Counted from the first letter of the stretch, positions 1 to 25,525 are shown. The stretch: DNA of 64,000 nucleotides from Octopus sinensis (GCF_006345805.1 NW_021833962.1:43400-107399), one strand, 5' to 3'. Notes: generated by a model from the sequence alone, not told the origin. Numbers and translations: made by a program.

Positions 1-347
1 CTACATGGTTCTGGGTTCAATCCCACTGCGTGGCACCTTGGGCAAGTGCCTTCTACTTTAGCCTTGGGCCGACCAAAGCCTTGTGAGTGGATTTGGTAGA
101 CGGAAACTGAAAGAAGCCTGTCGTATATATGTATATAGATATGCGTTTGTGTCTGTGTTTGTCCCCCTAGCATTGCTTGACAACCGATGCTGGTGTGTTT
201 ACGTCCCCGTAACTTAGCGGTTCGGCAAAAGAAACTGATGGAATAAGTACTGGGCTTACAAAGAATAAGTCCCGGGGTCGATTTGCTCGACTAAAGGCGG
301 TGCTCCAGCATGGCCGCAGTTACATTGACTGAAACAAGTAAAAGAGA

Positions 348-350
<3 letters not shown>
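1..350 (+). mobile_element. SINE family A copy (array unit 1)
   Basis: B-box-like GGTTCAATCC, core CCTTGGGCAAGTG, 3' end GGCGGTGCTCCAGCATGGCCGCAG..CTGAAACAAGTAAAAGAG; more than 20 related copies in the window. Confidence 0.9.
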
Positions 351-390
<40 letters not shown>

Positions 391-485
391 ATAACAAAGG
401 GTAAAATTAATTAATTAAGAAGTAATCAATAATTTCACCAAGTAGAATTCGGGATGAAAAAAGGACCAATTCACGGTAAACTTAA

Positions 486-740
486 GTAATACTTAATAAT
501 TAGGGTTCAGCAAAGATTTGCTTTACCAGATACCGAAGTTTAGAAATAGCAGCCAAAACCTTAGCTATTTAGTCTACTTTAAAAAGTTAGGGTTAGGGTT
601 AGGGTTATTTAGTCTACTTTAAAAAGTTAGGGTTAGGGTTCTAATTTTTAAAGTAGAAGAAATAGCTAAGGTTTTGGCTGCTATTTCTAAACTTCGTTAT
701 GTGGTAAAGCAAATCTTTGCTGAACCCTAATTATTAAGTA

Positions 741-741
<1 letters not shown>
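486..741. mobile_element. Fold-back/MITE-like element, ~105 bp inverted arms with (TTAGGG)n in the loop
   Basis: Left arm GTAATACTTAATAATTAGGGTTCAGC...TCTACTTTAAAAAGTTAG is the reverse complement of right arm CTAATTTTTAAAGTAGA...GCTGAACCCTAATTATTAAGTA. Confidence 0.85.
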
Positions 742-788
<47 letters not shown>

Positions 789-935
789 CTATATATATTG
801 TGTGTGTGTATATATATGTACATACATACATACATACATACATACATACACACCACAGGCACACAAATGGGAAGACACATGCACGCAGATATAATGCTTG
901 CATATAGGTATGTATGAAGGAATGAATGATAGATT

Positions 936-997
<62 letters not shown>

Positions 998-1379
998 TAG
1001 ATAGATAGATAGTGAAAAAGAGAGAGATAGTTAGATAGATAGATAGATAGATAGAGAGAGAGAGGGATAGATAGAGAGAGAGAGAGAGGGATAGATAGAG
1101 AGATAAATAAATAGTTATTTTGTGTGAGTGGGTCGAGAGAGCCTTATGAATCCTTATATTTACGTATATCCCCCTCCCCTCCTCATCCTTCGCTTACTCC
1201 TTCTTATAAGTTTCCCTCTCTTTACTATGTCTATCTATCATGTCAGACTCTCTTTTCTTGCTATATCACTTTCTGTCTCTCAGTTCCACGCAACTGTCTT
1301 CCTTTCACTCTCTCCCCCTCTATCTCTCCCTCCATAACTCTTTCCCATCATTCCTACCCCTCTACCACCCTGTTACGTG

Positions 1380-1600
1380 AGCAACAACCCAAGTTCGAGT
1401 CGGTAACATCCGGAAACACCCGGCTCTTTCCGGCCTCTTCTCAAGCAGACGACACCTTTCTAAAGAGACGTCCATTTGGCCTTTTGAGCCATCCTTCACG
1501 CAATCTTCCCTCTTTTCTACACTTTAAAGGTAAGATTACTTTATTATTTCCAAAAAAAAATATTTAATTCCCTTCGTTTGCTTCAAATTTTGATCTTTTT
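1380..1600 (+). other. Exon-like CpG module with ETS-like sites, TCT-like CTCTTTCC and splice donor AAG|GTAAGA (repeated near 6520-6740, 8480-8900, 10680-10895)
   Basis: CATCCGGAAAC 1407-1417, CTCTTTCC 1424-1431, donor GT 1530-1531, AAATTTTGA 1585-1593; conserved across array units. Function inferred only. Confidence 0.45.
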
Positions 1601-2006
1601 CTGGAAAAGCATTTTTTCCCTCCAATTTTACGGTTAATTTGTTGAAAGAATGGAAAATGAGAAAAGCAAAAAAAAGTGAAAAATATTCTTGAAAAATGAA
1701 TGAAAAATTGTTTCTCATCCATAAAATATCAGTAATTTATTGTATGTTTAATATATTATATGTCTTTTTATGTCGGTGAAATAATAAAAATAATTTGTTT
1801 ATGAACGGAAATATTGATATTTATGAACGAAGTTATATAAAGAATTGCTTAAAATGATTTTTGTGTGAGAAATTCCCTTCGATTCGTCGAGGTTTTCAAA
1901 CTTTTGGCCCTTTTTCTTTCATCTTCATGTTTTTGGGAAAAGAAATATATGAATGACTGTTATTATGTTTGTTGTCCACAAACGTTTACTCTGAGCATGT
2001 GTCCCA

Positions 2007-2335
2007 ACCACATGGTTCTGGGTTCAATCCCACTGCGTGGCAGCTTGGGCAAGTGTCTTCTACTATAGCCCCGGGCCGACCAAAGCCTTGTGAGTGGATT
2101 TGGTAGACGGAAACTGAAAGAAGCTTGTCGTATATATGTATATATATGTGTATGTGTGTGTGCGTGTTTGTCCCCTAGCATTGCTTGACAACCGATGCTG
2201 GTGTGTTTACGTTCTCGTAACTTAGCGGTTCGTCAAAAGAGACCGATAGAATAAGATAGAGTAAAGGCGGTGCTCCGGCATGGCCGCAGTCAAATGACTG
2301 AAACAAGTAAAAGAGAATATATATATATATAAAGA
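2007..2335 (+). mobile_element. SINE family A copy with internal deletion (array unit 2)
   Basis: Matches family A but lacks the TACTGGGCTTACAAAG...GCTCGACT segment. Confidence 0.9.
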
Positions 2336-2478
2336 GTGTATATATATATATATTATATATATATATATATATGTATATATATAACAACAAAGGGTAAAAT
2401 TAACTAATTGAGAAGTAATCAATAATTTCACCAAGTAGAATTCGGTATGAAAAAAGGACCAATTCACGGTAAACTTAA

Positions 2479-2728
2479 GTAATACTTAATAATTAGGGTT
2501 CAGCAAAGATTTGCTTTACCAGATACCGAAGTTTAGAAATAGCAGCCAAAACCTTAGCTATTTAGTCTACTTTAAAAAGTTAGGGTTAGGGTTAGGGTTA
2601 TTTAGTCTACTTTAAAATGTTAGGGTTAGGGCTCTCATTTTTAAAGTAGAAGAAATAGCTAAGGTTTTGGCTGCTATTTCTAAACTTCGTTATGTGGTAA
2701 AGCAAATCTTTGCTGAACCCTAATTATT
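2479..2728. mobile_element. Fold-back element, right arm cut by LINE insertion
   Basis: Same arms as 486-741; sequence switches to LINE after CCCTAATTATT. Confidence 0.85.
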
Positions 2729-5610
2729 TGCTGAACCTGCCATCCTCTACACACCATCATAAACTGCGAGCAGAGTACAAATTGTTGTCCTTAAATGCTC
2801 GCAGTTTAAGCAACAAAATACATTTGTTCAACGCCTACGTCAGAAGTATTGACCCTGACTTCATCACTGTCACGGAAACATGGGCGCATTCCTTACTCTG
2901 TGATGGCGTTTTCAACATCACGGGGTACAACCTCTTCCGTAAGGACCGCAATAACCGCCGTGGTGGTGGTGTGATGATCTACGTTCGTTCAAATTTTTTG
3001 GTAATTCCTTGTGCCGATTTGAACGAATCAGAAGAAGAAGTTTTTTTATGTGATGTACGTATGACCATGTCAACACTCCTGCTTGTCGTTGTTTATCGTC
3101 CCCCAAATTACCATCAGGACACACAGCTTTGCAACATCCTCCGAGCTGCTGCCAGGAAAACAGCCACTTATGTGTTTATTGCAGGCGATTTCAATCATCC
3201 TGAGATCGATTGGGAAACCTTCCATTGGCCACAGAGTGCAAACGATTTTGTTGAGCTTGTGCTGGACTCAAACTGGTCACAAGTAGTCACCTCTCCAACA
3301 AGAGACGACAACACCTTGGACCTGCTCTTCACCACAACTCCTGAAGCAGTTATCAATTGCACTACGGAGGAACCTCTAGGTGACTCTGATCATGCTATGA
3401 TCATCGCCAATCTGGCTCTTGCGGGCAACAAACACCTGAACCATCTCCAATCTGCTTCCTTCGATTGGAAGAGAGCAGATTGGCACCTGTACCACACTGA
3501 ACTACAGCACCCAAACTGGCGTGAATTCTACAACTCTGGAGATGTGAATACTATACTCCAGAGTATCCTGGACTCAATATGGGCAGCATGTGCAGCATCA
3601 GTGCCACATAAACAAAAAAAGAACTGCCCCAAAAGGGCAATTTGGGAAACTTCAGCGGTCCGACTTGCCAGGAAGGAACGTCGGACTGCTGAACAGGAAT
3701 ACAAGTTGCATAAATCAGACACCAACAGGAAGAAGCGGAATAAATCCTCCAACCATCTCAAGCAAGTGACAAAAAATGCAGTGCTTGAATTTGAACAGTG
3801 CATAGCAGCCAATCCTGACAGCAAGGTTTTCTGGAAATATGTGCATTCAAAGCAGAGACCTCACTGTCCAGTGGGCCCTCTTCGCAACCCTCACACAAAC
3901 CAGATCACTGACGACCCCAAGGAATGCGCAGAACTCATTGCCGAGTGCTATGCAAACATATTCACTGTTGAAAGTCAAAATGTACCATCTTCACCATCAC
4001 TAACAGCAAACTCCATAACAACTATGGAATTTACACCTGCAATGCTGCGACGTCACCTTCAAAATAAGCGCAACTATGCCTCCCTGGTCTCGATGGAGTT
4101 ACATACCTGCTTCTCAAACGAGGCAGGCACTTCCTTTTACACCAGCTTTCTATTTTCTTCCAGTACTGTCTCAACAATGGTGCTACTCCGGAGCAGTGGA
4201 AAACTGCCAGTGTCATTCCTCTGTTCAAAAAGGGTGACCGCACATCACCTGTCAACTATCGCCCAGTCAGTCTCACTAGCTGTATTGCAAAACTGATGGA
4301 ATCGTGTGTCAGAGAAACACTCTGGAACTTCTGGAGCTCTCACAGTCTCATCCGACCCTCACAATATGGATTTGTCCCTAACTCCAGCTGCAGTGACCAG
4401 CTTGTCGAGTTCCTTGAGGACATTACTCAGATCACTGACAGTGGCTCATGGGTGGATGTTGTCTACCTTGACTTTGCTAAGGCTTTCAACTCTGTGCCAC
4501 ACAAAAGGCTTATGGTGAACTCTCTGCAATGGGTGTGGGGGATGACCTTTTTAACTGGTTGAAATCCTTCATCCTCAGGCGAAAGGAGGTAGTCACAGTT
4601 CTAGGACAGCACTCTACACCATATGAGATGTCATCGGGTGTACCACAGGGATCTGTCCTTGGTCCCCTCCTGTTTGTGGCATACTTTAATGACATAGATG
4701 CCAATTTAAAGAATGCCACAGTATTGAAATATGCAGACGACATCAAGCTGTACCTTGAAATCAAGAGGACTGATCCTGATGTCTACAACTCTTTCCTGCA
4801 ATCAGACCTGGACACAATGCAGCAATGGATCACAGACTGGCAACTGAAACTGGCTGTGGACAAGTGTACCACCATGCATTTTGGGATAAAAAACCCTGCG
4901 TCCACATACTCCCTCCACAACACTGATATCAAGAAATCCTCTTGCGAGCGTGACCTAGGCATCACTGTCAGCAGTGAGTTGCATTGGACAAAGCACATCT
5001 CTAAAATTGTCAGGAGGGCCGAGGGTGTCTTGGCATCACTCAGCAAGACTTTTGTTAGCCGCTCTCCAGCCATCTATTTAAAACTGTATACAGCTATGGT
5101 ACGACCACACTTGGAATTCGCATCATCAGTTTGGAATCCCTATCTTGCTCAGAACATTGACCTCCTGGAATCTGTCCAGAGACGTGCAACCAAACGCATA
5201 CCCTCCATCAGACACCTACCATATTCTGAGCGCCTTGTTTCCCTGGGCATGGATTCACTGAAGCTCCGGCGTCTGGCGACGGACTTGGTGAACACCCGCA
5301 AGGTATCAACCACCTCACCAACAACAACACTGAACACCTTTTTGATCTCCATGTGTCTAACACATGTGGACATATTTACAAAGTCAGAAAACAGCACAGC
5401 TCCCATGACTTTCGGAAACATTTTTTCATGCTCAGAGTTGCTGAAGCATGGAACAAACTGCCTGCGTCAGTTGTTGACTGCCATGACACTGCATCCTTTA
5501 AGGCCCTCATGCTTTCCGAAATCCGCCGAAACTACACCTGATTATATATACACTTTAGATGAGTTGTAGTGCACCTGAGCACTGTACACAATTATTATTA
5601 TTATTATTAT
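2729..5610 (+). mobile_element. CR1-clade LINE: APE endonuclease + reverse transcriptase (ORF2), about 3 frameshifts, (ATT)n tail
   Basis: ORFs 2710-4296, 4296-4562, 4529-5569 and 5353-5541 give SLNARSL, VTETW, GDFNHP.IDW, PTR..NTLDL, YLDFAKAF.SVPH, GVPQGSVLGPLLF, YADDIKL, RPHLEF..SVWNPY, RV..AWN.LP; 3' AATTATTATT tail. Confidence 0.95.
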
Positions 5611-7147
5611 ATATATATATAATAGATATATATATATATATATATATATATATCTTACATACATAATACATACATACGTAACATACACACATACATACAT
5701 ACACACACAGGCACACACTCATGGGAGACACATGCACGCATACATACTAAATGCTTGCATATATATATGTATGTAAGTATGAAGGAATGAATGTCAGATT
5801 GATAGACAGACAGACAGACAGAAAACAGACAGACTGTCAGACAGACAGACAGGCAGATAGACAGACAGACAGATAGCTAGATAGACAGGTAGATAGATAG
5901 ACTGGTAGATAGATAGACAGACAGACAGATAGATAGACAGGTAGATAGACAGACAGACAGATAGATAGATAGATAGACGGGTAGATAGACAGACAGACAG
6001 ATAGATAGATAGATAGACAGGTAGATAGACAGACAGACTGATAGATAGATAGATAGACAGGTAGATAGACAGACAGACAGATAGATAGATAGACAGATAT
6101 ATAGATAAATAGTGAGTGTATGTGGGTGGGTAGAGAGAGCCTTATGAAACCTTATATGTACGTATATCCCCCACCCCTCCTCTTCCTCCGCTCACTCCTT
6201 CTCCTTATAATTTTCCCTCTCTTTACAATGTCTATCTATCATGTATGACTCTCTTTTCCTGCTATATCCCTTTCTTCCTCTCAGTTCCACGTAGCTGTCT
6301 TCCTTTCACTCTCTCCCTTCCTCACTTTCCCATCATTCCTCCCCCTCTACCACTCTGTCATATGTGCAACAACCAAAGTTCGAGTCGGTAACAACCGGCT
6401 CTTTCCGGCCTCTTCCCTTTCTTTCTCTCTGTTCCATGTAACTGTCTTCCTTTCACTCTCTCCCCCTCTCTCCCTCCCTCACTCTTTCCCATTATTCCTC
6501 CCCCTCTGCCACTCCGTCACGTGAGCAACAACCAAAGTTCGAGTCGGTAACATCCGGAAACACCCGGCTCTTTCCGGCCTCTTCTCAAGCAGACGACACC
6601 TTTCTAAAGAGACGTCCATTTGGCCTTTTGAGCCATTCTTCACGCAATCTTCCCTCTTTTCTACACTTTAAAGGTAAGATTACTTTATTATTTCCAAAAA
6701 AAAATATTTAATTCCCTTCGTTTGCTTCAAATTTTGATTTCTTTCTGGAAAAGCATTTTTCCCCTCCAATTTTACGGTTAATTTGTTGAAAGAATGGAAA
6801 ATGAGAAAAGCAAAAAAAGTGAAAAATATTCTTGAAAAATGAATGAAAAATTGTTTCTCATCCATAAAATATCAGTAATTTATTGCATGTTTAATATATT
6901 ATATGTCTTTTTATGTCGGTGAAATAATAAAAATAATTTGTTTATGAACGGAAATATTGATATTTATGAACGAAGTTATATAAAGAATTGTTTAAAATGA
7001 TTTTTGTGTGAGAAATTCCCTTCGATTCGTCGAAGTCTTCAAACTTTTGGCCCTTTTTCTTTCATCTTCATGTTTTGGGGAAACGAAATATGTGAATGAC
7101 TGTTATTATGTTTGTTGTCCACAAACGTTTACTCTGAGCATGTGTCC

Positions 7148-7510
7148 CAACCGCCTGGTTCTGGGTTCAGTCCCACTGCGTGGCACCTTGGACAAGTGTC
7201 TTCTACTATAGCCTTGGGCCGACCAAAGCCTTGTGAGTGGATTTGGTAGACGGAAACTGAAAGAAGCCTGTCGTGTATATGTATATAGATATGCGTGTGT
7301 GTCTTTGTGTCTGTGTTTGTCCCCCTAGCATTGCTTGACAACCGATGCTGGTGTGTTTACGTCCCCGTAACTTAGCGGTTCGGCATAAGAAACCGATGGA
7401 ATAAGTACAGGGCTTACAAAGAATAAGTCCCGGGGTCGATTTGCTCGACTAAAGGCGGTGCTCCAGCATGGCCGCAGTTACATTGACTGAAACAAGTAAA
7501 AGAGAGTGTA
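7148..7510 (+). mobile_element. SINE family A copy (array unit 3)
   Basis: Family A core and 3' tail. Confidence 0.9.
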
Positions 7511-7621
7511 TATATATATATATATAATAACCAAGGGTAAAATTAATTAATTAAGAAGTAATCAATAATTTCACCAAGTAGAATTCGGTATGAAAAAAGG
7601 ACCAATTCACGGTAAACTTAA

Positions 7622-7880
7622 GTAATACTTAATAATTAGGGTTCAGCAAAGATTTGCTTTACCAGATACCGAAGTTTAGAAATAGCAGCCAAAACATTAG
7701 CTATTTAGTCTACTTTAAAAAGTTAGGGTTAGGGTTAGGGTTATTTAGTCTACTTTAAAAAGTTAGGGTTAGGGTTCTAATTTTTAAAGTAGAAGAAATA
7801 GCTAAGGTTTTGGCTGCTATTTCTAAACTTCGTTATGTGGTAAAACAAATCTTTGCTGAAGCCTAATTATTAAGTATTAC
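7622..7880. mobile_element. Fold-back element (array unit 3)
   Basis: Termini GTAATAC...GTATTAC, TTAGGG loop with internal duplication. Confidence 0.85.
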
Positions 7881-7886
7881 TATATA

Positions 7887-7938
<52 letters not shown>

Positions 7939-8097
7939 CATACATACATACATACATACATAACATACATACATATGCATACATACATACATACATACAC
8001 ACACAGGCACACACTCATGGGAAGACACATGCACGCATACATACAAAATGCTTGCATATATATATGTATGTAAGTATGAAGGAATGAATGTCAGATT

Positions 8098-8135
<38 letters not shown>

Positions 8136-8621
8136 AAACAGACAGACTGTTAGACAGACAGACTGTCAGACAGAGAGACAGATAGATAGACAGACAGACA
8201 GATAGATAGATAGATAGACAGATAGATAAATAGTGAGTGTATGTGGGTGGGTGGAGAGAGCCTTATGAAACCTACACGTAAGTATATCCCCCCCCCTCCT
8301 TATCCTTGCTCACTCTTATAAACTTTCCCTCTCTTTACTCTGTATATCATCATGTCTGACTCTCTTTTCCTGCTATACCCTTTCTTCTCTCAGTTCCACG
8401 TAACTGTCTTCCTTTCACTCTCTCCCTCCCTCACTCCTTCCGATCATTCCTCCCCCTCTACTACTCTGTTACGTGAGCAACAACCAAAGTTCGAGTCGGT
8501 AACATCCGGAAACACCCGGCTCTTTCCGGCCTCTTCCCTTCTCAGCAGACGACACTTTTCCAAAGAGACGTCCATTTGGCCTTTTGAGCCATTCTTCACG
8601 CAATCTTCCCTCTTTTCGACA

Positions 8622-8863
8622 CTTTAAAGGTAAGATTACTTTATTATTTCCGGCCTCTTCTCAAGCAGACGACACTTTAAAGGTAAGATTACTTTATTAT
8701 TTCCGGCCTCTTCTCAAGCAGACGACACTTTAAAGGTAAGATTACTTTATTATTTCCGGCCTCTTCTCAAGCAGACGACACTTTAAAGGTAAGATTACTT
8801 TATTATTTCCGGCCTCTTCTCAAGCAGACGACACTTTAAAGGTAAGATTACTTTATTATTTCC
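8622..8863 (+). repeat. 53-bp tandem repeat, 4 full copies plus a partial
   Basis: CTTTAAAGGTAAGATTACTTTATTATTTCCGGCCTCTTCTCAAGCAGACGACA starts at 8622, 8675, 8728, 8781 and 8834. Confidence 0.95.
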
Positions 8864-9316
8864 AAAAAAAAATATTTAAATACCTTTGTTTGCTTCAAAT
8901 TTTGATTTTTTCTGGAAAAGCATTTTTTCCCTCCAATTTTACGGTTAATTTGTTGAAAGAATGGAAAATGAGAAAAGCAAAAAAAAGTGAAAAATATTCT
9001 TGAAAAATGAATGAAAAATTGTTTCTCATCCATAAAATATCAGTAATTTATTGCATGTTTAATATATTATATGTCTTTTTATGTCGGTGAAATAATAAAA
9101 ATAATTTGTTTATGAACGGAAATATTGATATTTGTGAACGAAGTTATATAAAGAATTGTTTAAAATGATTTTTGTGTGAGAAATTCCCTTCGATTCGTCG
9201 AAGTTTTCAAACTTTTGGCCCCTTTTCTTTCATCTTCATGTTTTGGGGAAACGAAATATGTGAATGACTGTTATTATGTTTGTTGTCCACAAACGTTTAC
9301 TCTGAGCATGTGTCCC

Positions 9317-9683
9317 AACCACATGGTGGGTTCAGTCCCACTGCGCGGCACCTTGGGCAAGTGTCTTCTACTATAGCCTTGGGCCGACCAAAGCCTTGTG
9401 AGTGGATTTGGTAGACGGAAACTGAAAGAAGCCTGTCGTATATATGTATATATATATATATATATATATGGTGTGTGTGTATGTGTTTGCGTGTCTGTAT
9501 TTGTCCCCCTAGCATTGCTTGACAACCGATGCTGGTGTGTTTACGTCCCCGTAACTTAGCGGTTCGGAAAAAGAGACGATAGAATAAGTACTGGGCTTAC
9601 AAAGAATAAGACCGGGGTCGATTTGCTCGACTAAAGGCGGTGCCCCAGCATGGCCGCAGTCAAATGACTGAAACAAGTAAAAG

Positions 9684-9686
<3 letters not shown>
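9317..9686 (+). mobile_element. SINE family A copy (array unit 4)
   Basis: Family A core and tail. Confidence 0.9.
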
Positions 9687-9755
<69 letters not shown>

Positions 9756-9862
9756 ATGTAATATATAATAACAAATGGTAAAATTAATTAATTGAGAAGT
9801 AATCAATAATTTCACCAAGTAGAATTCGGGATGAAAAAAGGACCAATTCACGGTAAACTTAA

Positions 9863-10080
9863 GTAATACTTAATAATTAGGGTTCAGCAAAGATTTGCTT
9901 ACCAGATACCGAAGTTTAGAGATAGCAGCCCAAACCTTAGCTATTTAGTCTACTTTAAAAAGTTAGGGTTAGGGTTCTAATTTTTGAAGTAGAAGAAATA
10001 GCTAAGGTTTTTGGCTGCTATTTCTAAACTTCATTATGTGGTAAAGCAATCTTTGCTGAACCCTAATTATTAAGTATTAC
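9863..10080. mobile_element. Fold-back element, short-loop variant (array unit 4)
   Basis: Same arms but only one TATTTAGTCTACTTTAAAAAGTTAGGGTTAGGGTT block. Confidence 0.85.
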
Positions 10081-10085
10081 TATAC

Positions 10086-10131
<46 letters not shown>

Positions 10132-11307
10132 ATATATATATATATATATATACATACTACATACATACATACATACATACATACACACACAGGCACACAC
10201 TCATGGGAAGACACATGTACGGATACATACAAAATGCTTGCATATATATATATAGTATGTCAGTATGAAGGAATGAATGTCAGATTGATAGACAGACAGA
10301 CAGATAGACAGATAGCTAGATAGATAGACAGACAGACCGATAGATAGAAAGACAGGTAGATAGACAGACAGACAGACAGACAGATAGATAGATAGACAGG
10401 TACATAGATAGATAGATAGTGAGTGTATGTGGGTGGGTGGAGAGAGCCTTACGAAACGTTACACGTAAGTATATCCCCCTTCCCTCCTCGTCCTCCGTTC
10501 ACTCCTTCTCATAACTTTCCCTCTCTTTACTCTGTATATCTATCATGTCAGACTCTCTTTTCTTGCTATATTACTTTCTGTCTCTCAGTTCCACGCAACT
10601 GTCTTCCTTTCACTCTCTCCCTCTCTATCTCTCCCTCCATAACTCTTTCCATCATTCCTCCCCCTCTACCACCCTGTTACGTGAGCAACAACCCAAGTTC
10701 GAGTCGGTAACATCCGGAAACACCCGGCTCTTCCGGCCTCTTCTCAAGCAGACGACACCTTTTAAAGAGTCCATTTGGCCTTTTGAGCCATTCTTCACGC
10801 AATCTTCCCTCTTTTCGACACTTTAAAGGTAAGATTACTTTATTATTTCCAATAAAAAATATTTAATTCCCTTCGTTTGCTTCAAAATTTGATCTTTCTG
10901 GAAAAGCATTTTTTCCCTCCAATTTTACGGTAATTTGTTGAAAGAATGGAAAATGAGAAAAGCAAAAAAATGTGAAAAATATTCTTGAAAAATGAATGAA
11001 AAATTGTTTCTCATCCATAAAATATCAGTAATTTATTGTATGTTTAATATTTATATGTCTTTTTATGTCGGTGAAATAATAAAAAGAATTTGTTTATGAA
11101 CGGAAATATTGATATTTATGAACGAAGTTATATAAAGAATTGTTTAAAATGGTTTTTGTGTGAGAAATTCCCTTCGATTCGTCGAAGTTTTCAAACTTTT
11201 GGCCCTTTTCTTTCATCTTCATGTTTTGGGGAAACGAAATATATGAATGACTGTTATTATGTTTGTTGTCCACAAACGTTTACTCTGAGCATGTGTCCCA
11301 ACCACAT

Positions 11308-11622
11308 GGTTCCGGGTTCAATCCCACTGCGTGGCACCTTGGGCAAGTGCCTTCTACTATAACCTTGGGCCGACTAATGCCTTGTGAGTGGATTTGGTAG
11401 ACGGAAACTGAAAGAAGCCTGTCGTGTATATGTATATAGATATGCGTGTGTGTCTTTGTGTCTGTGTTTGTCCCCCTAGCATTGCTTGACAACCGATGTT
11501 GGTGTGTTTACGTTCCCATAACCTAGCGGTTCGGCAAAAGAGACCGATGGGAGAAGTACTGGGCTTACAAAGAATAAGTCCCGGGGTTGATTTGCTCGAC
11601 TAAAAAAAGGCGGTGCTCCAGC
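11308..11622 (+). mobile_element. SINE family A copy, 3'-truncated (array unit 5)
   Basis: Ends at GGCGGTGCTCCAGCAC, then jumps to the array AT-rich block. Confidence 0.85.
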
Positions 11623-12019
11623 ACCAATAAAATATCAGTAATTTATTGTATGTTTAATATATTATATGTCTTTTTATGTCGGTGAAATAATAAAAATAAT
11701 TTGTTTATGAACAGAAATATTGATATTTACGACCGAAGTTATATAAACAATTGTTTAAAATGATTTTTGTGTGAGAAATTCCCTTCGATTCGTCGGGGTT
11801 TTCAAACTTTTGACCTTTTTCTTTCATCTTCATGTTTTTGGGAAACGAAAGATAGCTTCATGAAGAGAATTGATGCCTGTTTTATTGCGGAGGGAACTCA
11901 ATTTGAGCATTTGTTAGGATGAATATTAATAAAGTGTTTCTTCATGTTGGGTAACAGATGGATGTCAGATGGGATTTAAATCGGGAGAGTTCAGAGGATG
12001 CAAATATATATATATATAT

Positions 12020-12305
12020 GGTAAGTAGGTTGCTAACGAACCACATGGTTCCGGGTTCAGTCCCACTGCGTGGCACCTTGGGCAAGTGTCTTCTGCTATA
12101 GCCCCAGGCCGACCAAAGCCTTGTGGTGGACCTGGTAGACGGAAACTGAATGAAGCCTGTCGTATATATGTGTATATATACGTTTGTGTGTCTGTGTTTG
12201 TCCTCACCATCGCTTGTAACCGATGTTGGTGTGTTAATGTTCCTGGAACTTAAAGGTTCGGCCAAAGTGACTGATAGAATAAGTACTAGGCTTACAAAGA
12301 TCTTA
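12020..12305 (+). mobile_element. SINE family A, diverged and 3'-truncated
   Basis: GGTAAGTAGGTTGC...GGTTCAGTCCCACTGCGTGGCACCTTGGGCAAG. Confidence 0.85.
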
Positions 12306-12725
12306 ACCAATTGAGCATGTCCCTTGGTGGCTGACGATATGTGCATCTCTAATCACGAGCAGAGGTCGTGGGGGAGCATCATAGCCATGTGTTGAAAGGG
12401 ATTCTTTGGGGTTTGAATAAATCACCTTTGGAAACATGGGTGGTTTGTTCAATATCCTTAAACAACCCTTATTCAGAGACCTTTTGAGAGGGATGGGCTA
12501 CTCAACCTGAAGAAAATTCTAACTGGGCCCCACCTGCAAGGTCATGTGCTGTTTATCTTGATATGAGATCACCATGTTGCGCACATATGGTTGTGATGCA
12601 TGTGCCTGGTGTACCCTTATCAGACGGGTAGTCATGATGGGTATACTGGGCTTCCTATATTTGTACCCTAGTGTCACTTTGATGGCATGCACTGCTCTCT
12701 CACTCAATAATAATAATAATAATAA
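12305..12725 (+). mobile_element. Interspersed repeat with (AAT)n tail (probable retroposon 3' part)
   Basis: Ends CTCTCTCACTC followed by (AAT)n; recalled as a common octopus repeat, not verified. Confidence 0.5.
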
Positions 12726-13102
12726 TGATGATGATGATGAAAATAATCATAATAAATGCCCTGATGCAGTACTTGGCAGTGGCTCTCATGGCATAAGAGA
12801 GATAAAATATTTGGGTCTGATATGGGCGGTTTAAATGCTAAGGGTTAACAAGCACCTGGAGATAGTACTTGGGGTAAGCACATCTCTCCATGAATTTGTT
12901 AGCATCCGTCAGGGGAAAAATTAAATTGTAGTATATGGGAGATAACCCTGTAGTTTTAACGCCATAGTAACGAGTATCTCTTGCTCTATGTGTGTGTTTA
13001 TTCATGTGTTTCTGTGAGTGGTTGTGGTCGCGTGTATGTATGTGTGTGTGTGTGTGTGTGAAGCAGAGAATGGAGAGAGGATCGTAATTGTGAATGTGTA
13101 GG

Positions 13103-14718: not shown

Positions 14719-17700
14719 AAATCCTTAAATCCTTTAAAATGTTTTAGCCCGAAGGCCGCGGCCATGCTGGGGCACCACTGCTGAATGAGCTACACTAATA
14801 TGTGAATCCACCTCTGATACGTGGCACTTGATCAACAAGGGAGTTCGATGCTGCTGCCTGCATCTGCGTCTCCTGTTGTGAGGTAGGTTCATCTGGGACT
14901 CCCGACAAGAAGAGATCCAGTTTAGTTTTAAAGAAACCTACATCCACACCATGTAAGTCTCTCAGGCATTTAGCGAGGATGTTAAAGAGCTGTGGTCCTC
15001 TGAAACCCAAGCCGTTGCAGTATCTGGACCTGTATTTTGATGGTGATGTTGGAATCTTTTGCACCATGCAGTGGCGTCCCGTTCTGTGGTTGGGGTAACT
15101 TTGAATGCTAAAGTTTGGGACAAGACCCTCCAGGATTTTCCAGATGTATATCACCGCATATCTCTTACACCTCCGCTCTTGGGAGAAGAGGTTTAATACT
15201 TTCAGTCTCTCCCAGTAGCTGATATTTTGCATTGAGACGATCTTCTTTGTGTAGCTTCTGTGAATTGCTTCGAGTTCTGCTGTTAGTTTTATATTGTGTG
15301 GTGACCACAGTTGGGAGCAGTAGTCCAAGCGGCTGAGGATGAATGTTTTCCATAGGACCATCAGTGTCTCCTTCTCTCTTGTTCTGAAAGTTCGGAGAAT
15401 CCATCCAGCTAGCTGTCTGCATTTTATCACCAGATTAGTAATATGCACTTGGAAAGATGCATCATTGCTCATGTCAATGTCCAGGTTATGCACTGATTTT
15501 GACTCGGGGATTGCAATTCTTCCTGGGCCAGTGTATCCAGCCTGCACGTCGTTTACCTTTGTGTGCCAGTAGCGCAGGGCCTGGAACTTACCTGCATTAA
15601 ACTGCATGTTGTTGTCCGCCCACCTGTATATTGTATACAACTCCTGTTGCAGATGCGCAATATTTTCAGGGTTTTGTATTGTGTGGGAGACGTTTGTGTC
15701 ATCTGCATAGCTAGCAAGGGTGGCCATCATAGCAACTAAAGGCATGTCTGAAAGGGCCACTATGAACAGCAGTGGCCCCAAGACAGTGCCCTGTGGAACA
15801 CCGCTTGTTATTTGTGTTTCCTTGGAGGTGGCTCCATTGCTCACAACTGCCTGTCTTCTATCTTTTAGGAAGTTGTGCAGCCACTCTCCAAGTTTTCCGC
15901 CTATGCCGAGACCACACAGTTTGTGACAGATCATACCATGGTCGACTTCATCAAAGGCTTTTGCAAAGTCGAGATATATTACATCCACATTTGAGCCATT
16001 TAGTAGCTGTTTTAACACCCAGTCATAGTGTTGCAGGAGCTGTGTTAGGCAGCTTCTACCTGGTTGAAATCCATGGTGGGTGTCAGACAGCAAGTCATTT
16101 TCTTCAAGGAACATGATTAGTTTCTTGCGGACTATTCGTTCCATGACTTTGCTGATGTGTGAGGTCAGAGAGATAGGCCTATAATTTTTACCATCTGCCC
16201 TGCTACTTCCCTTATGTATAGGGCATATTACCCCCTCTTTCAATTTGACTGGGAGCTTACCACTTGCAAGAAAGCTCTGAAAAAGAAGCTGTAGCGGTTT
16301 TGCAAGGGCTCGTTTGCACGATTTGAGAAGGATCGCTGGAAATCCATCAGGTCCAGCAGCTGAGTTTGTGTCAATCTCATCTATGGCTAGTGTGATATCA
16401 TCATCTTCAATGTTGATGTACTCAATTTTTGCCTCTTTGGCCGCAGGTAAAGTGGCAAAGAATTATTCTGGGTTGTTTACTTGCCTGTGTCCTAGAGGTG
16501 TAGTGAACACACTTTGGAATTGTTCGTTCAGTATTTTACTTATCCTCGTGGGATTTCCTGTGAGAGAGCCATCTTTTTGGAAGAGAGGTCCTATTCTCTG
16601 GTGCACTGTGGCTGTCTTTTTGGCAAACTTAAAGAAAGCTTTAGGGTTTGATTTTATATTTTCTATTACCCAATCTTCTTTATCTGCTCTCTCCTTTTCA
16701 TGGGACTGATGCAGACTTTTCTCAGTTTCCATTAGCATTCTCTCGAGCCGAGACTTCTCACCACTTTTGGTGTGCTTGCTCAGGCGGTTCGCAATCCTTG
16801 TCCATCGTCTCATAAGAATCTTCCTTTCTCTAGGGATCCTGTTTTTGTTCTTGTGTGTGCTGGCCCTGCACACTGGGACATATTTGTCACATATGGCTTG
16901 TATTATGGACATGAAGTGTTTGTGTTTCATGTTAATGTCCTCTGTGGAGAGACATTTAGGCCAATCCTGTTTGAGGATCTCCTTCTCAATCATCTTCCAA
17001 TTTGCTTTATGAAAGTTTAAGGTGGAGAGAAGGTGGATGCTTCATATAGGCTGTGTGTCTACGGGGGCTTTTGGTCCATACATAGACAGCTCTATTATGT
17101 TGTGATCCGAGATCATTGTTGGCATCACTTTAACATTATGGATAATATCCATATTGTTTGTGAAGCAGAGATCCAGTATATTATCTGCCCTTGTTGGTTG
17201 CAGAACTATTTGCTCCATGAAAGAGGCATTTGTGAGATGGAGCAGGGACTCAGCCTGTGCCTGCTGATGGTGTGTCATCCCTGAGAGCATCTGCCCTCCT
17301 GGCCATTTCACATTGGGGAAGTTAAAGTCACCCATGAAGAATACACTGCTGTGTTGTTTAAGGTTGGTGAGGACTTCTCCTATTTTTGTTAGGCAGTCTT
17401 CAAACATGCCTGAGTGATTTGGGGCATCTGGTGGGCGATATGTAGTACATATGATGATATTCAGTTGTCTTATGTGTACAATTTGAGTGTCACAGACTGA
17501 GTTTGAATATGACAACAGGACCTAGGGCGTGAGGTCATCTCGGATGTACATTGCAACTCCACCATGGCTCCTCCCTTTTCTATCTGAGCGTATGACTGCA
17601 TATTGCGGTATGTGTATTTCTGCATCCCCTATATCGGGTCCAAGATGCGTTTCTGTGAGTGCCATGCATATAGCTTGATTGCATGTCACAAGGTCTCTCA

Positions 17701-18370
17701 GGAATGAGATTTTCCTCTTACAGTTTCCACGCAGCAGCCCTCCTACGTTCAGCAGAAATATTTTTGTGGTGTGTGTGTTGGTGTTGGTGTCTGTGGTGGC
17801 CATCCTGCATCTGTTGGTGGTGGCCTTATGTGGTGGTAGTTCCAGCTTTGTGCTTGTAGCCAGGTCAGCTGCTGAACAATTTTTTGTGCCATGCACAAAA
17901 AAGATTGCTGTTCAGCTGCTGCCCTTCTCACATCTGGGTGAAGCTGGCCATTTGTTGGGTTACCGCGCACCACATCCGCTTATCGTCTTTCAGTGGTCAG
18001 TGCGCTATTTTTCCTTCTTTTATATTTTTCTTTTTCTTTATCTTTTTGTTCTCCCCTAGGGAGGGATTTTCGTCTTATGGCCGAGCGGTTTTGGTAGGGC
18101 TTCTGATGTGCAAAGCGACAGTTCGTACCTTCGATGCCGTACCACCAGTCCCTCTTCAGGTAGAATTTGCAGATGTTTCTGCCTTTTCCCTTATAGTTCT
18201 TGCTGGGGTTCTTTTGTTTTTTCTGAACAGGGTTTGTTTTAGCTTTAATTTTCTTGTCTTTTAACTCCTGTTTCCCATCAATTTTAGGGTGCTTTTCTTT
18301 TTTTGTGGCCATCGCACCTCTTTGGTCTTCAGTTGTGTGTTGCGAGCTGGACATGTGTCATTGTTTCCCT
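14719..18370 (-). mobile_element. Near-full-length CR1-group LINE A: N-terminal CCCH zinc-finger region, APE, RT; frameshifted
   Basis: ORF pieces 17980-18354 (CKFYLKRDW.YGIEGTNCRFAH), 17522-17896 (ALTETHL), 17042-17515 (MGDFNFP, PTRADNILDL), 16463-16993, 14795-16243 (YLDFAKAFD, GVPQGTVLGP, YADDT); tail (AAGGATTT)n. Confidence 0.95.
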
Positions 18371-19442: not shown

Positions 19443-19444
19443 AT

Positions 19445-19519
19445 ATATATATATATATATATTATACATATATATACATATATAGATATATGTATAAATA
19501 TATACGTACGTATATAATG

Positions 19520-19566
<47 letters not shown>

Positions 19567-19656
19567 AATATATATATACATATATATATATGATAAATAT
19601 ATATATGTATATATATATATGTATATATATATATATACGTATATATATTATACATA

Positions 19657-19691
<35 letters not shown>

Positions 19692-19947
19692 GTATAAATA
19701 TATATTGTATATATATAATATATATATATATATATACATATAACATATATATATATATATGTATAAATATATATATGTTATATATATATATATATATATA
19801 TATGTAGAAATATATATATGTATATATTATATGTAAATATATATATATGTATATATATGTATATATATATATGTATATATATATATGTATTATATATTAT
19901 ATATTATTATATATATATAACATATATACAATATATATATATATTAT

Positions 19948-19994
<47 letters not shown>

Positions 19995-20065
19995 TATATA
20001 ATATATATTATATATAGATATATATATATACATTATATATATATAATATGTATAAATATATATGT
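19445..20065. repeat. (TA)n-rich microsatellite
   Basis: Visible directly. Confidence 0.95.
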
Positions 20066-20069
20066 ATAT

Positions 20070-23000: not shown

Positions 23001-23475
23001 GAACTCAATTTGTACTCCTTGGAACGAACGAAGAGAGAGAGATATGCCAGTGATATACATATGGAAATCCTGGAGGGACTAGCACCAAATTTTGGAATTG
23101 AGAGCTGTTCCAATCCCCGTACAGGACGTCACTGTGTGGTGCCAAAGGTCCCGTCTTCCACATCCAGGGTAAGGAGCAGATACTGTAATAGCCTGGGGTT
23201 CAGGGGCCCTCAGCTTTCAACAAACTGCCAAGAAAACTAAGAGATCTACATGATGCGGATGTGGACATTTTCAAAAAACATCTAGACAAGCTGCTTTCCG
23301 GGATCCCAGATGAAAACCACTGCAAGGTACGAAGGAACCTAAGGGCAGCAGCTACAAACTCTCTCTTAGATCAGTGGCCAGCCACGGCAAACTGGACTTA
23401 GAGAGGGTAGCAACAAGGGCGGTGCCCCAGCATGGCCTCAGCCGGATGGCTGAAACAAGTAAAAGAGTAAAAGAG

Positions 23476-23668: not shown

Positions 23669-24439
23669 ATTAGCAAAAGAGAGCTGGTAGAATAAGTACT
23701 AGGCTTACAAAGTATAAGTCCTGGGTCCTGGCGTGTTCAGCATGGCCGCATTCAAAAATACTGAAACAAGTAAAAGAGTAAAGAGTGAAGATGTCTTAAA
23801 ATCAGCCCTAATTAACTTTCAAATAACATGCCTAAGTACACAACTCAGAAATTAAGCTCTGTAAGTGTTTGAATAAACTTGCTTATAGGGAAAATTTAAT
23901 TTAATTAAATTTTTTTTTTAAGTATCACCATTATAGGTATTTATACTCCGGCGAAATTAAGAAATCAACTCGTAAATAAAGAAACCTGCGAGTCCATCTG
24001 TGTACACGAACATACACGATCGACAAGAACAAAACGGTCTGAGGAGAATTTAAGTGCTATGTTTTGCATAACTCTTGGATAGCGTGTAGTAAATTTCGGC
24101 ATCCAGGGGAGAGAACTCCTTCAAAAGTTGACACCGATTTACCTCCCTTGTCCTACATATTCTGCAGCGTGTCTGCAAGCTTCTCATTAAGATAACACGA
24201 GTGAACGTCGGAACCTTATGCCTGCGTGGACGCACGGCTTGCTAGAAACAACAGCCAGTTTTCTTTTAAATTTGGCATTTTCTGATTTAATAAGATATCA
24301 AAAGGACACTTCAGACGCAGTCCCATTTAGACGATACCCGGAAGAAGGAGAGGATGGTTACGATTGAAATACCTTTTGATTAAAGGTGTGTCTGCTATGG
24401 TTTTTGATTAAAGGTTGTCGCTATGGTTTTGATGTATAT

Positions 24440-24527
24440 ATATATATATATTATAATATATATATATATATATATTAGATATATATATATATATATACAT
24501 ACATCATATATATATATATATATATAT

Positions 24528-24561
<34 letters not shown>

Positions 24562-24632
24562 CCATATATATATATATATATACATACTATATATATATAT
24601 ATATATATATACATACATACATCTATATATAT

Positions 24633-24667
<35 letters not shown>

Positions 24668-24722
24668 CATACATATATATATCTATATATATACACATAC
24701 ATCATATATATATACATACATA

Positions 24723-24755
<33 letters not shown>

Positions 24756-24796
24756 CATACATATATATATATATATACACACAAAAACACATATAT

Positions 24797-24830
<34 letters not shown>

Positions 24831-25086
24831 ATATACACACATATATTATATTATATCCCACATATTATATATATATATCTACACACACACGTAATATATA
24901 TTTATTATATTTACCACAAATATATATATATATATGTATATATATATACACCATATATATAATATAGATAATAAACATACAATAAGAGATATATATATAT
25001 ATATATATATATAATAACATACATATATATTATATATATAATATATACAACAACACATATATATATATATATATAATACACCTATA

Positions 25087-25139
<53 letters not shown>

Positions 25140-25334
25140 ATTATATATATAATAATATACATATAATTTTATATATATAATATATAATATATTGATATAT
25201 ATATATATAATATATATTACATAGATATATACATATATATATACATATATATATACATATATATATTACCTATATATATACCATATATAGATATATACAT
25301 TTATATATACATATATATACATATATATATATAC

Positions 25335-25410
<76 letters not shown>

Positions 25411-25490
25411 CATAGATTATATATATACAATATATATACATATATATATATATATACATATATATTATATATATATATATATGATATATC

Positions 25491-25525
<35 letters not shown>

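What the first reader, a model, noticed from the sequence alone, without database searches (positions are those of the whole stretch)
1380..10900. Tandemly arrayed exon+splice-donor module: spliced-leader-RNA-like or TCT/5'TOP promoter array
Seen: each complete ~2.1 kb unit carries a conserved CpG module ending CACTTTAAAG|GTAAGA (GT at 1530, 6674, 8630, 10829). The donor sits in a small hairpin (AAGGTA-AGAT-TACTTT). In units 1 and 2 AAATTTTGA lies ~55 nt downstream (1585-1593 in unit 1); unit 3 has a one-T-longer version and unit 4 a degenerate one. Upstream are ETS-like CATCCGGAAAC and CTCTTTCC. Known: SL RNA genes are often tandemly arrayed and combine a short exon, a base-paired GU donor and an AU4-6G Sm site; ribosomal-protein and snoRNA-host promoters combine ETS sites with a TCT initiator. 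Inference: this is either an SL-like RNA array, which I do not know to be established in cephalopods, or an amplified promoter plus first exon.
Basis: partly seen in the sequence, partly recalled or inferred. Interest (0 to 1): 0.78.

Follow-up and report, generated by a model that had tools for sequence, protein, structure and literature searches.

The report
Young 2-kb tandem duplication, not spliced-leader genes
The repeated "exon plus splice donor" is one short promoter-like stretch that was copied along with about 2 kb of surrounding junk DNA, so it is an ordinary tandem duplication with no sign of being a spliced-leader RNA gene array.

Summary
The repeated motif is real. CACTTTAAAG|GTAAGATTAC occurs 8 times on the + strand, against 0.01 expected by chance. 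It repeats because window 1-11854 is a head-to-tail array of a composite unit of about 2.0-2.2 kb.

Each unit holds a 5'-truncated SINE, (TA)n, a 97-nt-arm foldback with a TTAGGG loop, microsatellites, a CT-rich tract, the 158-bp module and a 450-bp AT-rich tail. There are four full units and one deleted unit, and the array runs off the left edge of the window.

The module is not better conserved than its flanks. It has 8.8% variable columns, against 4.1% in the AT-rich tail and 6.1% in the foldback. Copies differ by indels inside the putative exon and initiator.

One unit took a LINE insertion. The last unit lost the module.

Nothing supports a spliced-leader (SL) RNA. There is no Rfam match and no structure beyond shuffled controls. 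The Sm-like motif has a 4-5% background chance. The exon would be about 100-110 nt if transcription starts at the TCT motif.

No coding exon was recognised in the 52 kb downstream. The module may descend from a genuine promoter and non-coding first exon, but this cannot be tested here.

The parts
1..11854 (+). Tandem array (macrosatellite) of a composite unit of about 2.0-2.2 kb. It holds four full units and one deleted unit, and the window edge cuts it on the left.
   Evidence: Unit anchor ACGTTTACTCTGAGCATGTG at 1982, 7125, 9293 and 11276. Full-length alignment of the units. Self-BLAST.
1..1981 (+). Unit A. It starts mid-SINE at the window edge.
1982..7124 (+). Unit B, expanded by a LINE insertion and an internal partial duplication.
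2727..5597 (+). Non-LTR retrotransposon inserted at the right end of unit B's foldback. It has endonuclease and reverse-transcriptase domains, a broken frame and an (ATT)n tail. It is present in this unit only, so it post-dates the amplification.
   Evidence: Pfam Exo_endo_phos 1e-14 and RVT_1 3e-17. Junction sequences. No other copy in the window.
6363..6420 (+). Partial, degraded extra copy of the upstream half of the module (GCAACAACC..GGTAACAACCGGCTCTTTCCGGCCTCTTC). It lacks ATCCGGAAACAC and is fused back to the CT-rich tract.
7125..9292 (+). Unit C.
9293..11275 (+). Unit D.
11276..11854 (+). Unit E, a deletion derivative. SINE 11301-11623 is joined through the microhomology CCA to the last 228 bp of the AT-rich tail. 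The foldback, microsatellites and module are lost. The array ends at 11850-11854.
1372..1529 (+). Module copy 1 (GTTACGTGAGC ... CACTTTAAAG). It holds inverted CCGGAA cores at 1410 and 1428, CTCTTTCC at 1424 and GACGTC at 1467. It is ATG-free from 1424 to the donor at 1530.
6516..6673 (+). Module copy 2.
8468..8629 (+). Module copy 3. It has a 4-nt insertion and substitutions in the putative exon.
10676..10828 (+). Module copy 4. It has a 1-nt deletion in CTCTTTCC and a 4-nt deletion that removes the GACGTC site.
8617..8863 (+). Perfect 53-bp x4.7 mini-array. The chimeric unit GGCCTCTTCTCAAGCAGACGACAC|TTTAAAGGTAAGATTACTTTATTATTTCC occurs exactly four times (8652, 8705, 8758, 8811). Its junctions lie at the microhomologies CGACAC and TTTCC. 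It adds four donor copies.
   Evidence: TRF 100% matches, score 494
1585..1593 (+). Sm-like AAATTTTGA. Identical copies lie at 6729 and 8897, and the degenerate AAAATTTGA at 10884.
1530..1981 (+). AT-rich tail ('intron-like', GC 0.25). It is the best-conserved part of the unit. Copies lie at 6674-7124, 8864-9292 and 10829-11275, with a partial copy at 11627-11854.
489..741 (.). Foldback element with 97-nt arms (96% complementary) and a (TTAGGG)2-3 loop. Copies lie at about 2478-2728, 7621-7881 and 9862-10081.
7150..7500 (+). 5'-truncated SINE at the head of each unit. Copies lie at 6-342, 2007-2255, 9327-9681 and 11301-11623. The family has at least 20 copies or fragments in the window.

Best explanation
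Window 1-11854 is a young macrosatellite. A stretch of about 2 kb of ordinary, repeat-laden DNA was duplicated head to tail. The stretch already contained a SINE, a foldback element, microsatellites, a CT-rich tract, a short promoter- and first-exon-like piece, and an AT-rich tail. Since then the array has been reshuffled by unequal exchange or gene conversion and by replication slippage.

The conserved 'exon + GT donor' module recurs because it was copied by descent with everything around it. Nothing indicates that each copy is maintained as a gene. The ancestral single copy may have been, or may still be, a real housekeeping-type promoter with a non-coding first exon. I put that at about 0.4, as an inference from motifs only. 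In the array the copies behave as passengers.

Shown: the array, its composition, the equal or lower conservation of the module, the structural decay, and the lack of RNA-family or structure signal. Inferred: the mutational mechanism, and the passenger status of the module.
For: 1. Whole-unit homology. All five segments of the unit align across units A-D. The foldback, CT-rich tract, module and AT-rich tail occur nowhere else in the 64 kb.

2. No excess conservation of the module.
- Mean pairwise identity is 95.2% for the module, 97.7% for the AT-rich tail, 97.1% for the foldback and 93.3% for the SINE.
- Variable columns are 14 of 160 (8.8%) for the module against 17 of 410 (4.1%) for the AT-rich tail. 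Fisher p = 0.039, in the direction opposite to constraint.
- The module does not differ from the foldback (p = 0.34) or the SINE (p = 0.28).

3. Structural decay inside modules.
- Unit C has a 4-nt insertion, and unit D has 1-nt and 4-nt deletions.
- Unit B carries a degraded half-copy.
- Unit C carries a perfect 53-bp chimeric mini-array.
- The last unit has lost the module.

4. Relative timing. The SINE and foldback sit at the same position in every unit, so they pre-date the amplification. The LINE is in unit B only, so it post-dates it.

5. Mosaic genealogy. Informative sites group AC|BD 9:1:0 in the SINE, but AD|BC 6 and AB|CD 5 with AC|BD 0 in the CT-rich tract. That is the signature of exchange between units.

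6. Junction microhomologies (CGACAC, TTTCC, CCA) fit slippage or template switching.

7. No SL-type signal. There are no Rfam hits at gathering score in the window, and no SL or snRNA family even at E <= 10 or E <= 1. Fold z-scores are -1.44, -1.0, +0.68, +1.16 and +0.20.
Against: - The module does look like a real promoter and 5' exon. Two inverted CCGGAA cores lie 18 bp apart, whereas the 16 cores outside the array are never closer than 271 bp.
- It also has GACGTC and TACGTGA sites and a YYCTTTYY match.
- A 100-110 nt stretch without ATG ends in the only AAGGTAAGA sites in the window.
- The 22 nt after the donor are invariant in all 8 copies.
- With only four copies at 3-5% divergence, the power to detect weak constraint is low.
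- No expression data, no second assembly and no related species could be consulted. Function of individual copies is therefore not excluded.
Confidence: 0.72

Rival explanations
1. Functional array of alternative promoters and non-coding first exons. Each unit's module fires and its exon is cis-spliced to a common exon 2 of one downstream gene. That exon 2 lies beyond the window or was not recognised. The duplication would then have multiplied a housekeeping-type (ETS + TCT/5'TOP-like) promoter.
For: The promoter-like motif cluster, an ATG-free 100-110 nt stretch and a consensus donor AAG|GTAAGA followed by AT-rich, intron-like sequence. Local GC is 0.49 and CpG observed/expected 1.05, against 0.38 and 0.69 for the window. 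Eight of the 10 CpG positions are CG in all four copies.
Against: - No Pfam domain other than TE-type HTH in any + strand ORF of at least 40 aa in the 52 kb downstream.
- TE ORFs fill most of the rest.
- The module is no better conserved than neutral flanks.
- Unit D has lost a base of the initiator motif and its GACGTC site.
- The SINEs, microsatellites and foldback of the downstream units would all have to lie within intron 1.
- YYCTTTYY is common (66 in the window). The CTCTTTCC match here is also simply the reverse strand of the second CCGGAA core.
Confidence: 0.2
2. Spliced-leader RNA gene array. Each unit would encode a small Sm-class RNA whose 5' mini-exon, ending ...CACTTTAAAG, is trans-spliced onto many mRNAs.
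For: Tandem arrangement. GT donor after WWG (AAG). An AU4G motif 55 nt downstream in three of four units. A small hairpin across the donor.
Against: - No Rfam SL, snRNA or 5S match at any threshold tried.
- The hairpin is -2.5 kcal/mol with z = -1.0. The region that should hold stem-loops flanking the Sm site folds worse than shuffles (z = +0.68, +1.16).
- The Sm-like motif has a 4-5% chance expectation and is degraded in unit 4.
- The exon would be 100-110 nt from the only initiator-like motif. Known SL exons are 22-25 or 36-39 nt (PMC3795323).
- The module varies more than the AT-rich tail.
- The unit is a 2-kb TE and microsatellite patchwork.
- The mini-array copies have a donor but no Sm site.
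- SL trans-splicing has never been proven in Mollusca (PMC3795323). The host phylum was not verified here.
Confidence: 0.03
3. Assembly artefact. The array, or its perfect 53-bp mini-array, would be a mis-assembly or a collapse or expansion of reads.
For: The 53-bp repeat is 100% identical over 4.7 copies. Repeat-rich regions are prone to assembly errors.
Against: The 2-kb units differ by 2-7% in substitutions and by unit-specific indels, a LINE insertion and deletions. An artefactual duplication would not produce these. Only the copy number of the 53-bp mini-array is open to doubt.
Confidence: 0.03

Closest known systems
Macrosatellites / kilobase-unit tandem segmental duplications (for example human DXZ4, D4Z4 and the 1q23.3 tRNA VNTR discussed in PMC3491370 and PMC4041453)
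   Same: Head-to-tail units of kilobase size. Each unit carries a promoter-like or CpG-containing piece together with embedded transposon fragments. There is mosaic similarity between units from unequal exchange, and unit-specific insertions and deletions.
   Different: Only about five units are seen, and the left end is unknown. The units are AT-rich and full of microsatellites. No protein or RNA gene is recognised in the unit. Copy-number polymorphism and chromatin state are unknown.
Spliced-leader RNA gene arrays (nematode SL1/5S repeats, trypanosomatid, flatworm, tunicate and cnidarian SL genes)
   Same: Tandem repetition. A GT donor preceded by AAG. A downstream AU4G motif.
   Different: - No SL-like fold and no RNA-family match.
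- The putative exon is far longer than known SL exons.
- The unit is a TE patchwork with no 5S gene.
- The candidate gene is not the best-conserved part of the unit.
- Leader usage is untested.
TCT / 5'TOP housekeeping promoters with ETS sites and a short non-coding first exon (ribosomal-protein, translation-factor and snoRNA-host genes)
   Same: CCGGAA cores next to a YYCTTTYY match. An ATG-free leader that ends in a consensus donor.
   Different: - No downstream gene and no intronic snoRNA. The only hit is sno_ncR1 at 26 bits against a gathering score of 94.
- The leader of about 106 nt is long for TOP genes (my own knowledge).
- Unit D has lost a base of the motif.

Membership tests
Spliced-leader RNA gene | Short 5' mini-exon (about 16-50 nt; 22-25 or 36-39 nt in the survey PMC3795323) directly followed by a GU donor | tested here: inconclusive
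   The donor AAG|GTAAGA is present in all copies. No transcription start site can be determined. From the only initiator-like motif the exon is 100-110 nt, outside the known range.
Spliced-leader RNA gene | Sm-binding site (AU4-6G) in a single-stranded stretch between stem-loops of the intron part | tested here: not met
   The motif AAUUUUGA is present in units 1-3, and unit 4 has AAUUUGA. However, 4-5% of background positions have one at this distance. The 111-146 nt after the donor fold worse than shuffles (z = +0.68, +1.16, +0.20), with no flanking stem-loops in the centroid.
Spliced-leader RNA gene | Similarity to a curated SL, snRNA or linked 5S family | tested here: not met
   Rfam 15 gives 0 hits at gathering score in 64 kb. 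No SL, snRNA or 5S hit at E <= 10 in 1300-2000 or at E <= 1 in 6300-11900. Lineage-specific SL RNAs would not be in Rfam, so this is weak negative evidence.
Spliced-leader RNA gene | In an array, the RNA gene is the conserved part and the spacer is the variable part | tested here: not met
   The module has 8.8% variable columns, against 4.1% for the AT-rich tail and 6.1% for the foldback. There are indels inside the candidate exon.
Spliced-leader RNA gene | The leader is found on the 5' ends of many unrelated mRNAs, and the small RNA is TMG-capped | not testable with these tools
   No transcriptome of the source organism is reachable. Protein-database searches through the module ORF and the tail ORF gave nothing.
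TCT/5'TOP-type promoter with non-coding first exon | Polypyrimidine initiator YYC(+1)TTTYY with nearby ETS-type sites | tested here: inconclusive
   CTCTTTCC is at 1424, 6568 and 8520. Unit D has CTC-TTCC. CCGGAA cores lie at -14 and overlap the motif on the reverse strand. YYCTTTYY occurs 66 times in the window, so the motif alone carries little weight. A pair of CCGGAA cores 18 bp apart is unusual (minimum spacing elsewhere 271 bp).
TCT/5'TOP-type promoter with non-coding first exon | The first exon is spliced to downstream exons of a gene | tested here: not met
   No non-TE Pfam domain in + strand ORFs of at least 40 aa over 11855-64000. Sensitivity for short exons is limited, and exon 2 may lie beyond the window.
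TCT/5'TOP-type promoter with non-coding first exon | Transcription initiation and open, unmethylated chromatin at the site | not testable with these tools
   No CAGE, ATAC or methylation data. The CpG decay comparison among copies has too few sites.
Macrosatellite / tandem segmental duplication | Head-to-tail units of at least 1 kb that are homologous over their whole length | tested here: met
   Anchors at 1982, 7125, 9293 and 11276. Full-length alignment. Self-BLAST.
Macrosatellite / tandem segmental duplication | Divergence is similar across functional-looking and junk parts of the unit (copying by descent, not selection) | tested here: met
   Pairwise identity is 93-98% for the SINE, foldback, module and tail. 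The module lies in the middle of that range.
Macrosatellite / tandem segmental duplication | Transposon insertions shared by all units (older) and private to one unit (younger) | tested here: met
   The SINE and foldback are at the same place in every unit. The LINE at 2727-5597 is only in unit B.
Macrosatellite / tandem segmental duplication | Evidence of exchange between units (mosaic genealogies) | tested here: met
   Informative sites: SINE AC|BD 9, against 1 and 0 for the other groupings. CT-rich AD|BC 6, AB|CD 5, AC|BD 0. Both halves of the 53-mer of unit C match unit-D-type sequence, not unit C's own.

The most novel reading that the evidence does not exclude
The module is a lineage-specific spliced-leader-like (or other Sm-class) small RNA gene, amplified within a macrosatellite in a mollusc/cephalopod-type genome. 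Its transcription start would lie about 20-40 nt upstream of the donor, giving a leader like ...CAATCTTCCCTCTTTTCTACACTTTAAAG. This is not excluded, because no transcript data could be consulted and the last approximately 55 nt of the exon plus 22 nt of the intron are nearly invariant among copies.
Probability: 0.03. Interest if true: 0.85.

Novelty: new member of a known kind. Interest (0 to 1): 0.14.

Why it matters
As it stands it matters little. It is one more kilobase-unit tandem duplication in a very repeat-rich genome, and it shows that a motif conserved across tandem copies is not evidence of selection.

It would matter only in two cases. Transcript data might show that the duplicated promoters and first exons are all used, which would be a small case study of promoter multiplication by macrosatellite growth. 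Or, much less likely, the leader might be trans-spliced, which would extend SL trans-splicing to a phylum where it has not been demonstrated.

Tried and rejected
1. Rfam at gathering score on the whole window, and at E <= 10 or E <= 1 on the array. Only microsatellite-driven miRNA look-alikes and a 26-bit sno_ncR1 hit (gathering score 94) appeared. I rejected these as chance.

2. tRNA scan of 1-13000: none.

3. RNA folding of the candidate SL RNA and its parts: not different from shuffles.

4. External copies or transcripts sought through the protein databases. I used the ORF that reads through the CT-rich tract and module and the ORF in the AT-rich tail. Neither had a homologue.

5. Exact-protein look-ups of three TE ORFs, to fetch the source contig and see left of the window: not on record.

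6. Exact DNA scans of metagenome and prokaryote genome collections for the donor region and the ETS region: 0 hits, as expected.

7. Organism identification through the mariner transposase. The closest relatives are unnamed Logan contigs and a mantis-shrimp protein. This element spreads too widely to name the host. A literature string search for the SINE found nothing. The 'cephalopod' attribution therefore remains unverified here.

I replaced it with concatenated + strand ORFs.

9. CpG-decay comparison to infer germline methylation of the module: too few sites to say anything.

10. The idea that the module belongs to a dispersed transposon family is rejected for this window. There is no other copy in 12-64 kb. 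It is not testable genome-wide.

Full report
**1. What is in the sequence**

The 20-mer CACTTTAAAGGTAAGATTAC occurs 8 times on the + strand, at 1520, 6664, 8620, 8673, 8726, 8779, 8832 and 10819. It occurs nowhere else in the window. Shuffles give 0.01 expected matches.

Three details are wrong or were missed:
- Unit 3 has the identical AAATTTTGA at 8897, not a longer version.
- Unit 3 carries four additional donors inside a perfect 53-bp x4.7 mini-array at 8617-8863.
- Unit 4 has lost one base of CTCTTTCC and four bases of the putative exon.

**2. Why it repeats**

Window 1-11854 is a head-to-tail array of a composite unit. The anchor ACGTTTACTCTGAGCATGTG lies at 1982, 7125, 9293 and 11276. 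Each unit contains, in order:
- a 5'-truncated SINE of about 340 bp, from a family with at least 20 copies or fragments in the window
- (TA)n
- a foldback element with 97-nt arms, 96% complementary, and (TTAGGG)2-3 in the loop
- (TA)n, (TACA)n, (GACA)n and (GATA)n microsatellites
- a CT-rich tract of about 250 bp
- the 158-bp module
- an AT-rich tail of about 450 bp (GC 0.25)

Position 1 of the window is already inside a SINE, in phase with the other units. The array therefore continues to the left, and its true size is unknown. The foldback, CT-rich tract, module and tail have no other copy in 12-64 kb.

**3. History readable from the copies**

- The SINE and foldback sit at the same place in every unit, so they pre-date the amplification.
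- A non-LTR retrotransposon at 2727-5597 is present only in unit B and is unique in the window. It has Exo_endo_phos and RVT_1 domains, a broken frame and an (ATT)n tail. It post-dates the amplification. It also explains the 5144-bp donor spacing.
- Unit B has a degraded half-copy of the module at 6363-6420, fused back onto the CT-rich tract.
- Unit C's mini-array consists of four exact copies of a chimeric 53-mer. The first 24 nt of the region after the CCGG are joined to the last 7 nt of the exon, the donor and 22 nt of tail. The junctions lie at the microhomologies CGACAC and TTTCC. Both halves match unit-D-type sequence rather than unit C's own diverged version.
- The last unit, E, is a deletion derivative. 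Its SINE is joined through CCA to the last 228 bp of the tail, so the module is gone.
- Informative sites give different groupings in different segments. The SINE gives AC|BD 9, against 1 and 0 for the alternatives. The CT-rich tract gives AD|BC 6, AB|CD 5 and AC|BD 0. This points to exchange or conversion between units.

Together these are the normal dynamics of a macrosatellite built on slippage-prone DNA.

**4. Is the module under constraint?**

No signal of constraint was found.

| Segment | Mean pairwise identity, units A-D | Variable ungapped columns |
|---|---|---|
| Module | 95.2% | 14/160 (8.8%) |
| AT-rich tail | 97.7% | 17/410 (4.1%) |
| Foldback | 97.1% | 19/313 (6.1%) |
| SINE | 93.3% | 36/293 (12.3%) |
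| CT-rich tract | 86.7% | 46/204 (22.5%) |
| Microsatellites | 85.6% | not computed |

- Module against tail gives Fisher p = 0.039, in the direction opposite to purifying selection.
- Module against foldback (p = 0.34) and against SINE (p = 0.28) are not different.
The module decays more slowly than the microsatellites, but faster than or equal to the unique neutral-looking flanks.
- The invariant part is the donor plus 22 nt (0 of 22 variable columns), together with most of the last approximately 55 nt of the exon. With four copies at 3-5% divergence this is within expectation.
- CpG decay could not be used, because there are too few sites.

**5. Test of the SL-RNA reading**

- Rfam 15 finds nothing at gathering score in the 64 kb. 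It finds no SL, snRNA or 5S family at E <= 10 in 1300-2000 or at E <= 1 in 6300-11900. The only hits are microsatellite-driven miRNA look-alikes and a 26-bit sno_ncR1 hit against a gathering score of 94.
- The donor hairpin AAGGUA/UACUUU is -2.5 kcal/mol, with z = -1.0.
- The stretch 1424-1620 has z = -1.44.
- The stretch that should hold the Sm site between stem-loops folds worse than shuffles (z = +0.68, +1.16 and +0.20).
- An RAU3-6GR motif lies 20-100 nt downstream of 5.1% of random positions, 3.8% of AT-rich windows and 5 of 77 GTRAG sites outside the array. Because all copies are one motif by descent, this is a single coincidence at about p = 0.05.
- Known SL exons are 22-25 or 36-39 nt, and Mollusca is listed among phyla where SL trans-splicing has never been proven (PMC3795323). 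Here the only initiator-like motif would give a 100-110 nt exon.
- The mini-array copies have a donor without any Sm-like site.

I put the SL reading at about 3%.

**6. Test of the promoter and first-exon reading**

In favour:
- Two CCGGAA cores in inverted orientation lie 18 bp apart. The 16 cores outside the array are never closer than 271 bp.
- GACGTC and TACGTGA sites are present.
- CTCTTTCC matches YYCTTTYY, although this motif occurs 66 times in the window and is here the reverse strand of the second CCGGAA core.
- No ATG occurs in the 100-110 nt up to the donor in any unit.
- These are the only AGGTAAGA sites in the window.
- AT-rich, intron-like sequence follows the donor.

Against or missing:
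- The 'island' is 158 bp with 9 CpGs.
- There is no excess conservation.
- Unit D has damaged motifs.
- The + strand ORFs of at least 40 aa in the 52 kb downstream give no Pfam domain except a sub-threshold HTH. The remainder is LINEs, mariners, SINEs and simple repeats.

Exon 2 could lie beyond the window or be too short to detect. My estimate that the ancestral module is or was a genuine promoter and first exon is about 0.4. My estimate that the array copies function as an alternative-first-exon array is about 0.2.

**7. Attempts to bring in outside data**

All of these failed:
- Protein-database searches through the two ORFs that cross unit-specific sequence.
- Exact look-ups of TE ORFs to recover the source contig.
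- DNA pattern scans of the metagenome and prokaryote collections.

The mariner's relatives (90% to Logan contigs, 89% to a mantis-shrimp protein) do not identify the host. I could not verify the cephalopod origin with tools. The TTAGGG loops and the TE and microsatellite load are compatible with it, on my own knowledge only.

**8. Verdict**

A block of about 2 kb of repeat-laden DNA containing one promoter- and exon-like stretch was tandemly duplicated, and it has since been diverging, exchanging and decaying as a unit.

This is a new instance of a well-known kind of feature, the macrosatellite or tandem segmental duplication. The SL-RNA interpretation is not supported. The 'amplified promoter + first exon' interpretation holds only in the weak sense that such a piece may be among the passengers. 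Interest is low. Transcript mapping and cross-species comparison would settle the rest.

Noticed in passing
window 489-741, 2478-2728, 7621-7881, 9862-10081: Foldback element in every array unit. It has 97-nt arms, 96% complementary, with (TTAGGG)2-3 (a telomere-type hexamer) in the loop. Units A-C carry a 40-bp internal direct duplication that unit D lacks. It is flanked by TTAA-containing sequence, so it may be a MITE. There is no other copy in the window.
   Followed up: partly
window 2727-5597 (+): Non-LTR retrotransposon (APE endonuclease plus reverse transcriptase). Its frame is broken between about 4296 and 4529, and it has an (ATT)n tail. It inserted at the right end of unit B's foldback and is the only copy of this element in the window.
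   Followed up: partly
window 8617-8863: Perfectly identical 53-bp x4.7 mini-array built from a chimeric deletion product of the module. Both halves match unit-D-type sequence rather than the host unit C. This suggests template switching between units, or recent slippage. Its copy number should be checked against raw reads.
   Followed up: yes
window 30567-31841 (+) and 53369-54642 (-): Two mariner copies in opposite orientation, 96% identical over 1275 bp. Each has a 293-aa ORF truncated relative to 350-aa relatives. The closest database proteins are 90% identical (Logan contigs) and 89% identical (a mantis-shrimp 'GVQW3-like' protein), which hints at a horizontally widespread mariner lineage.
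   Followed up: partly
window 14795-17911 (-) and 20430-23400 (+): Two further LINE copies (APE plus RT) in inverted orientation, flanking a (TA)n block at 19443-20072.
   Followed up: no
window 32397-36458: A 4-kb block of degenerate (TAC)n organised into a 107-bp higher-order repeat of about 14.5 copies. It gives long spurious Leu/Val/Thr-rich ORFs on both strands.
   Followed up: no
window 24435-26294: A 1.9-kb (TA)n tract (GC 0.09 over 25-26 kb). Several other (TA)n blocks of 0.2-0.7 kb are scattered through the window.
   Followed up: no
window 47033-47994 and 50436-50989: Two minisatellites with 21-bp periods. One has the unit CACACACACTATAGTTACACACA with about 42 copies. The other has the unit TATTGGGGTACCTGGTGATAT with about 27 copies and a 142-163-bp higher-order structure.
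   Followed up: no
window 28600-28900, 45811-46050 (+), 55340-55561 (-): An unclassified dispersed repeat. Its translation (...GMVV.PAVLFHHNFL...LCVTLNIPENYVKG.RVCGVLSHLHVNF.SRLFR) recurs at least three times. It has no Pfam match.
   Followed up: no
window 11855-12020: Immediately right of the array lies a short ORF tail, FMKRIDACFIAEGTQFEHLLG*. It resembles the C-terminus of a DNA-transposase, and an older SINE copy (12040-12300, 83% to the array SINE) follows it. The array's right boundary therefore abuts other transposon debris.
   Followed up: no
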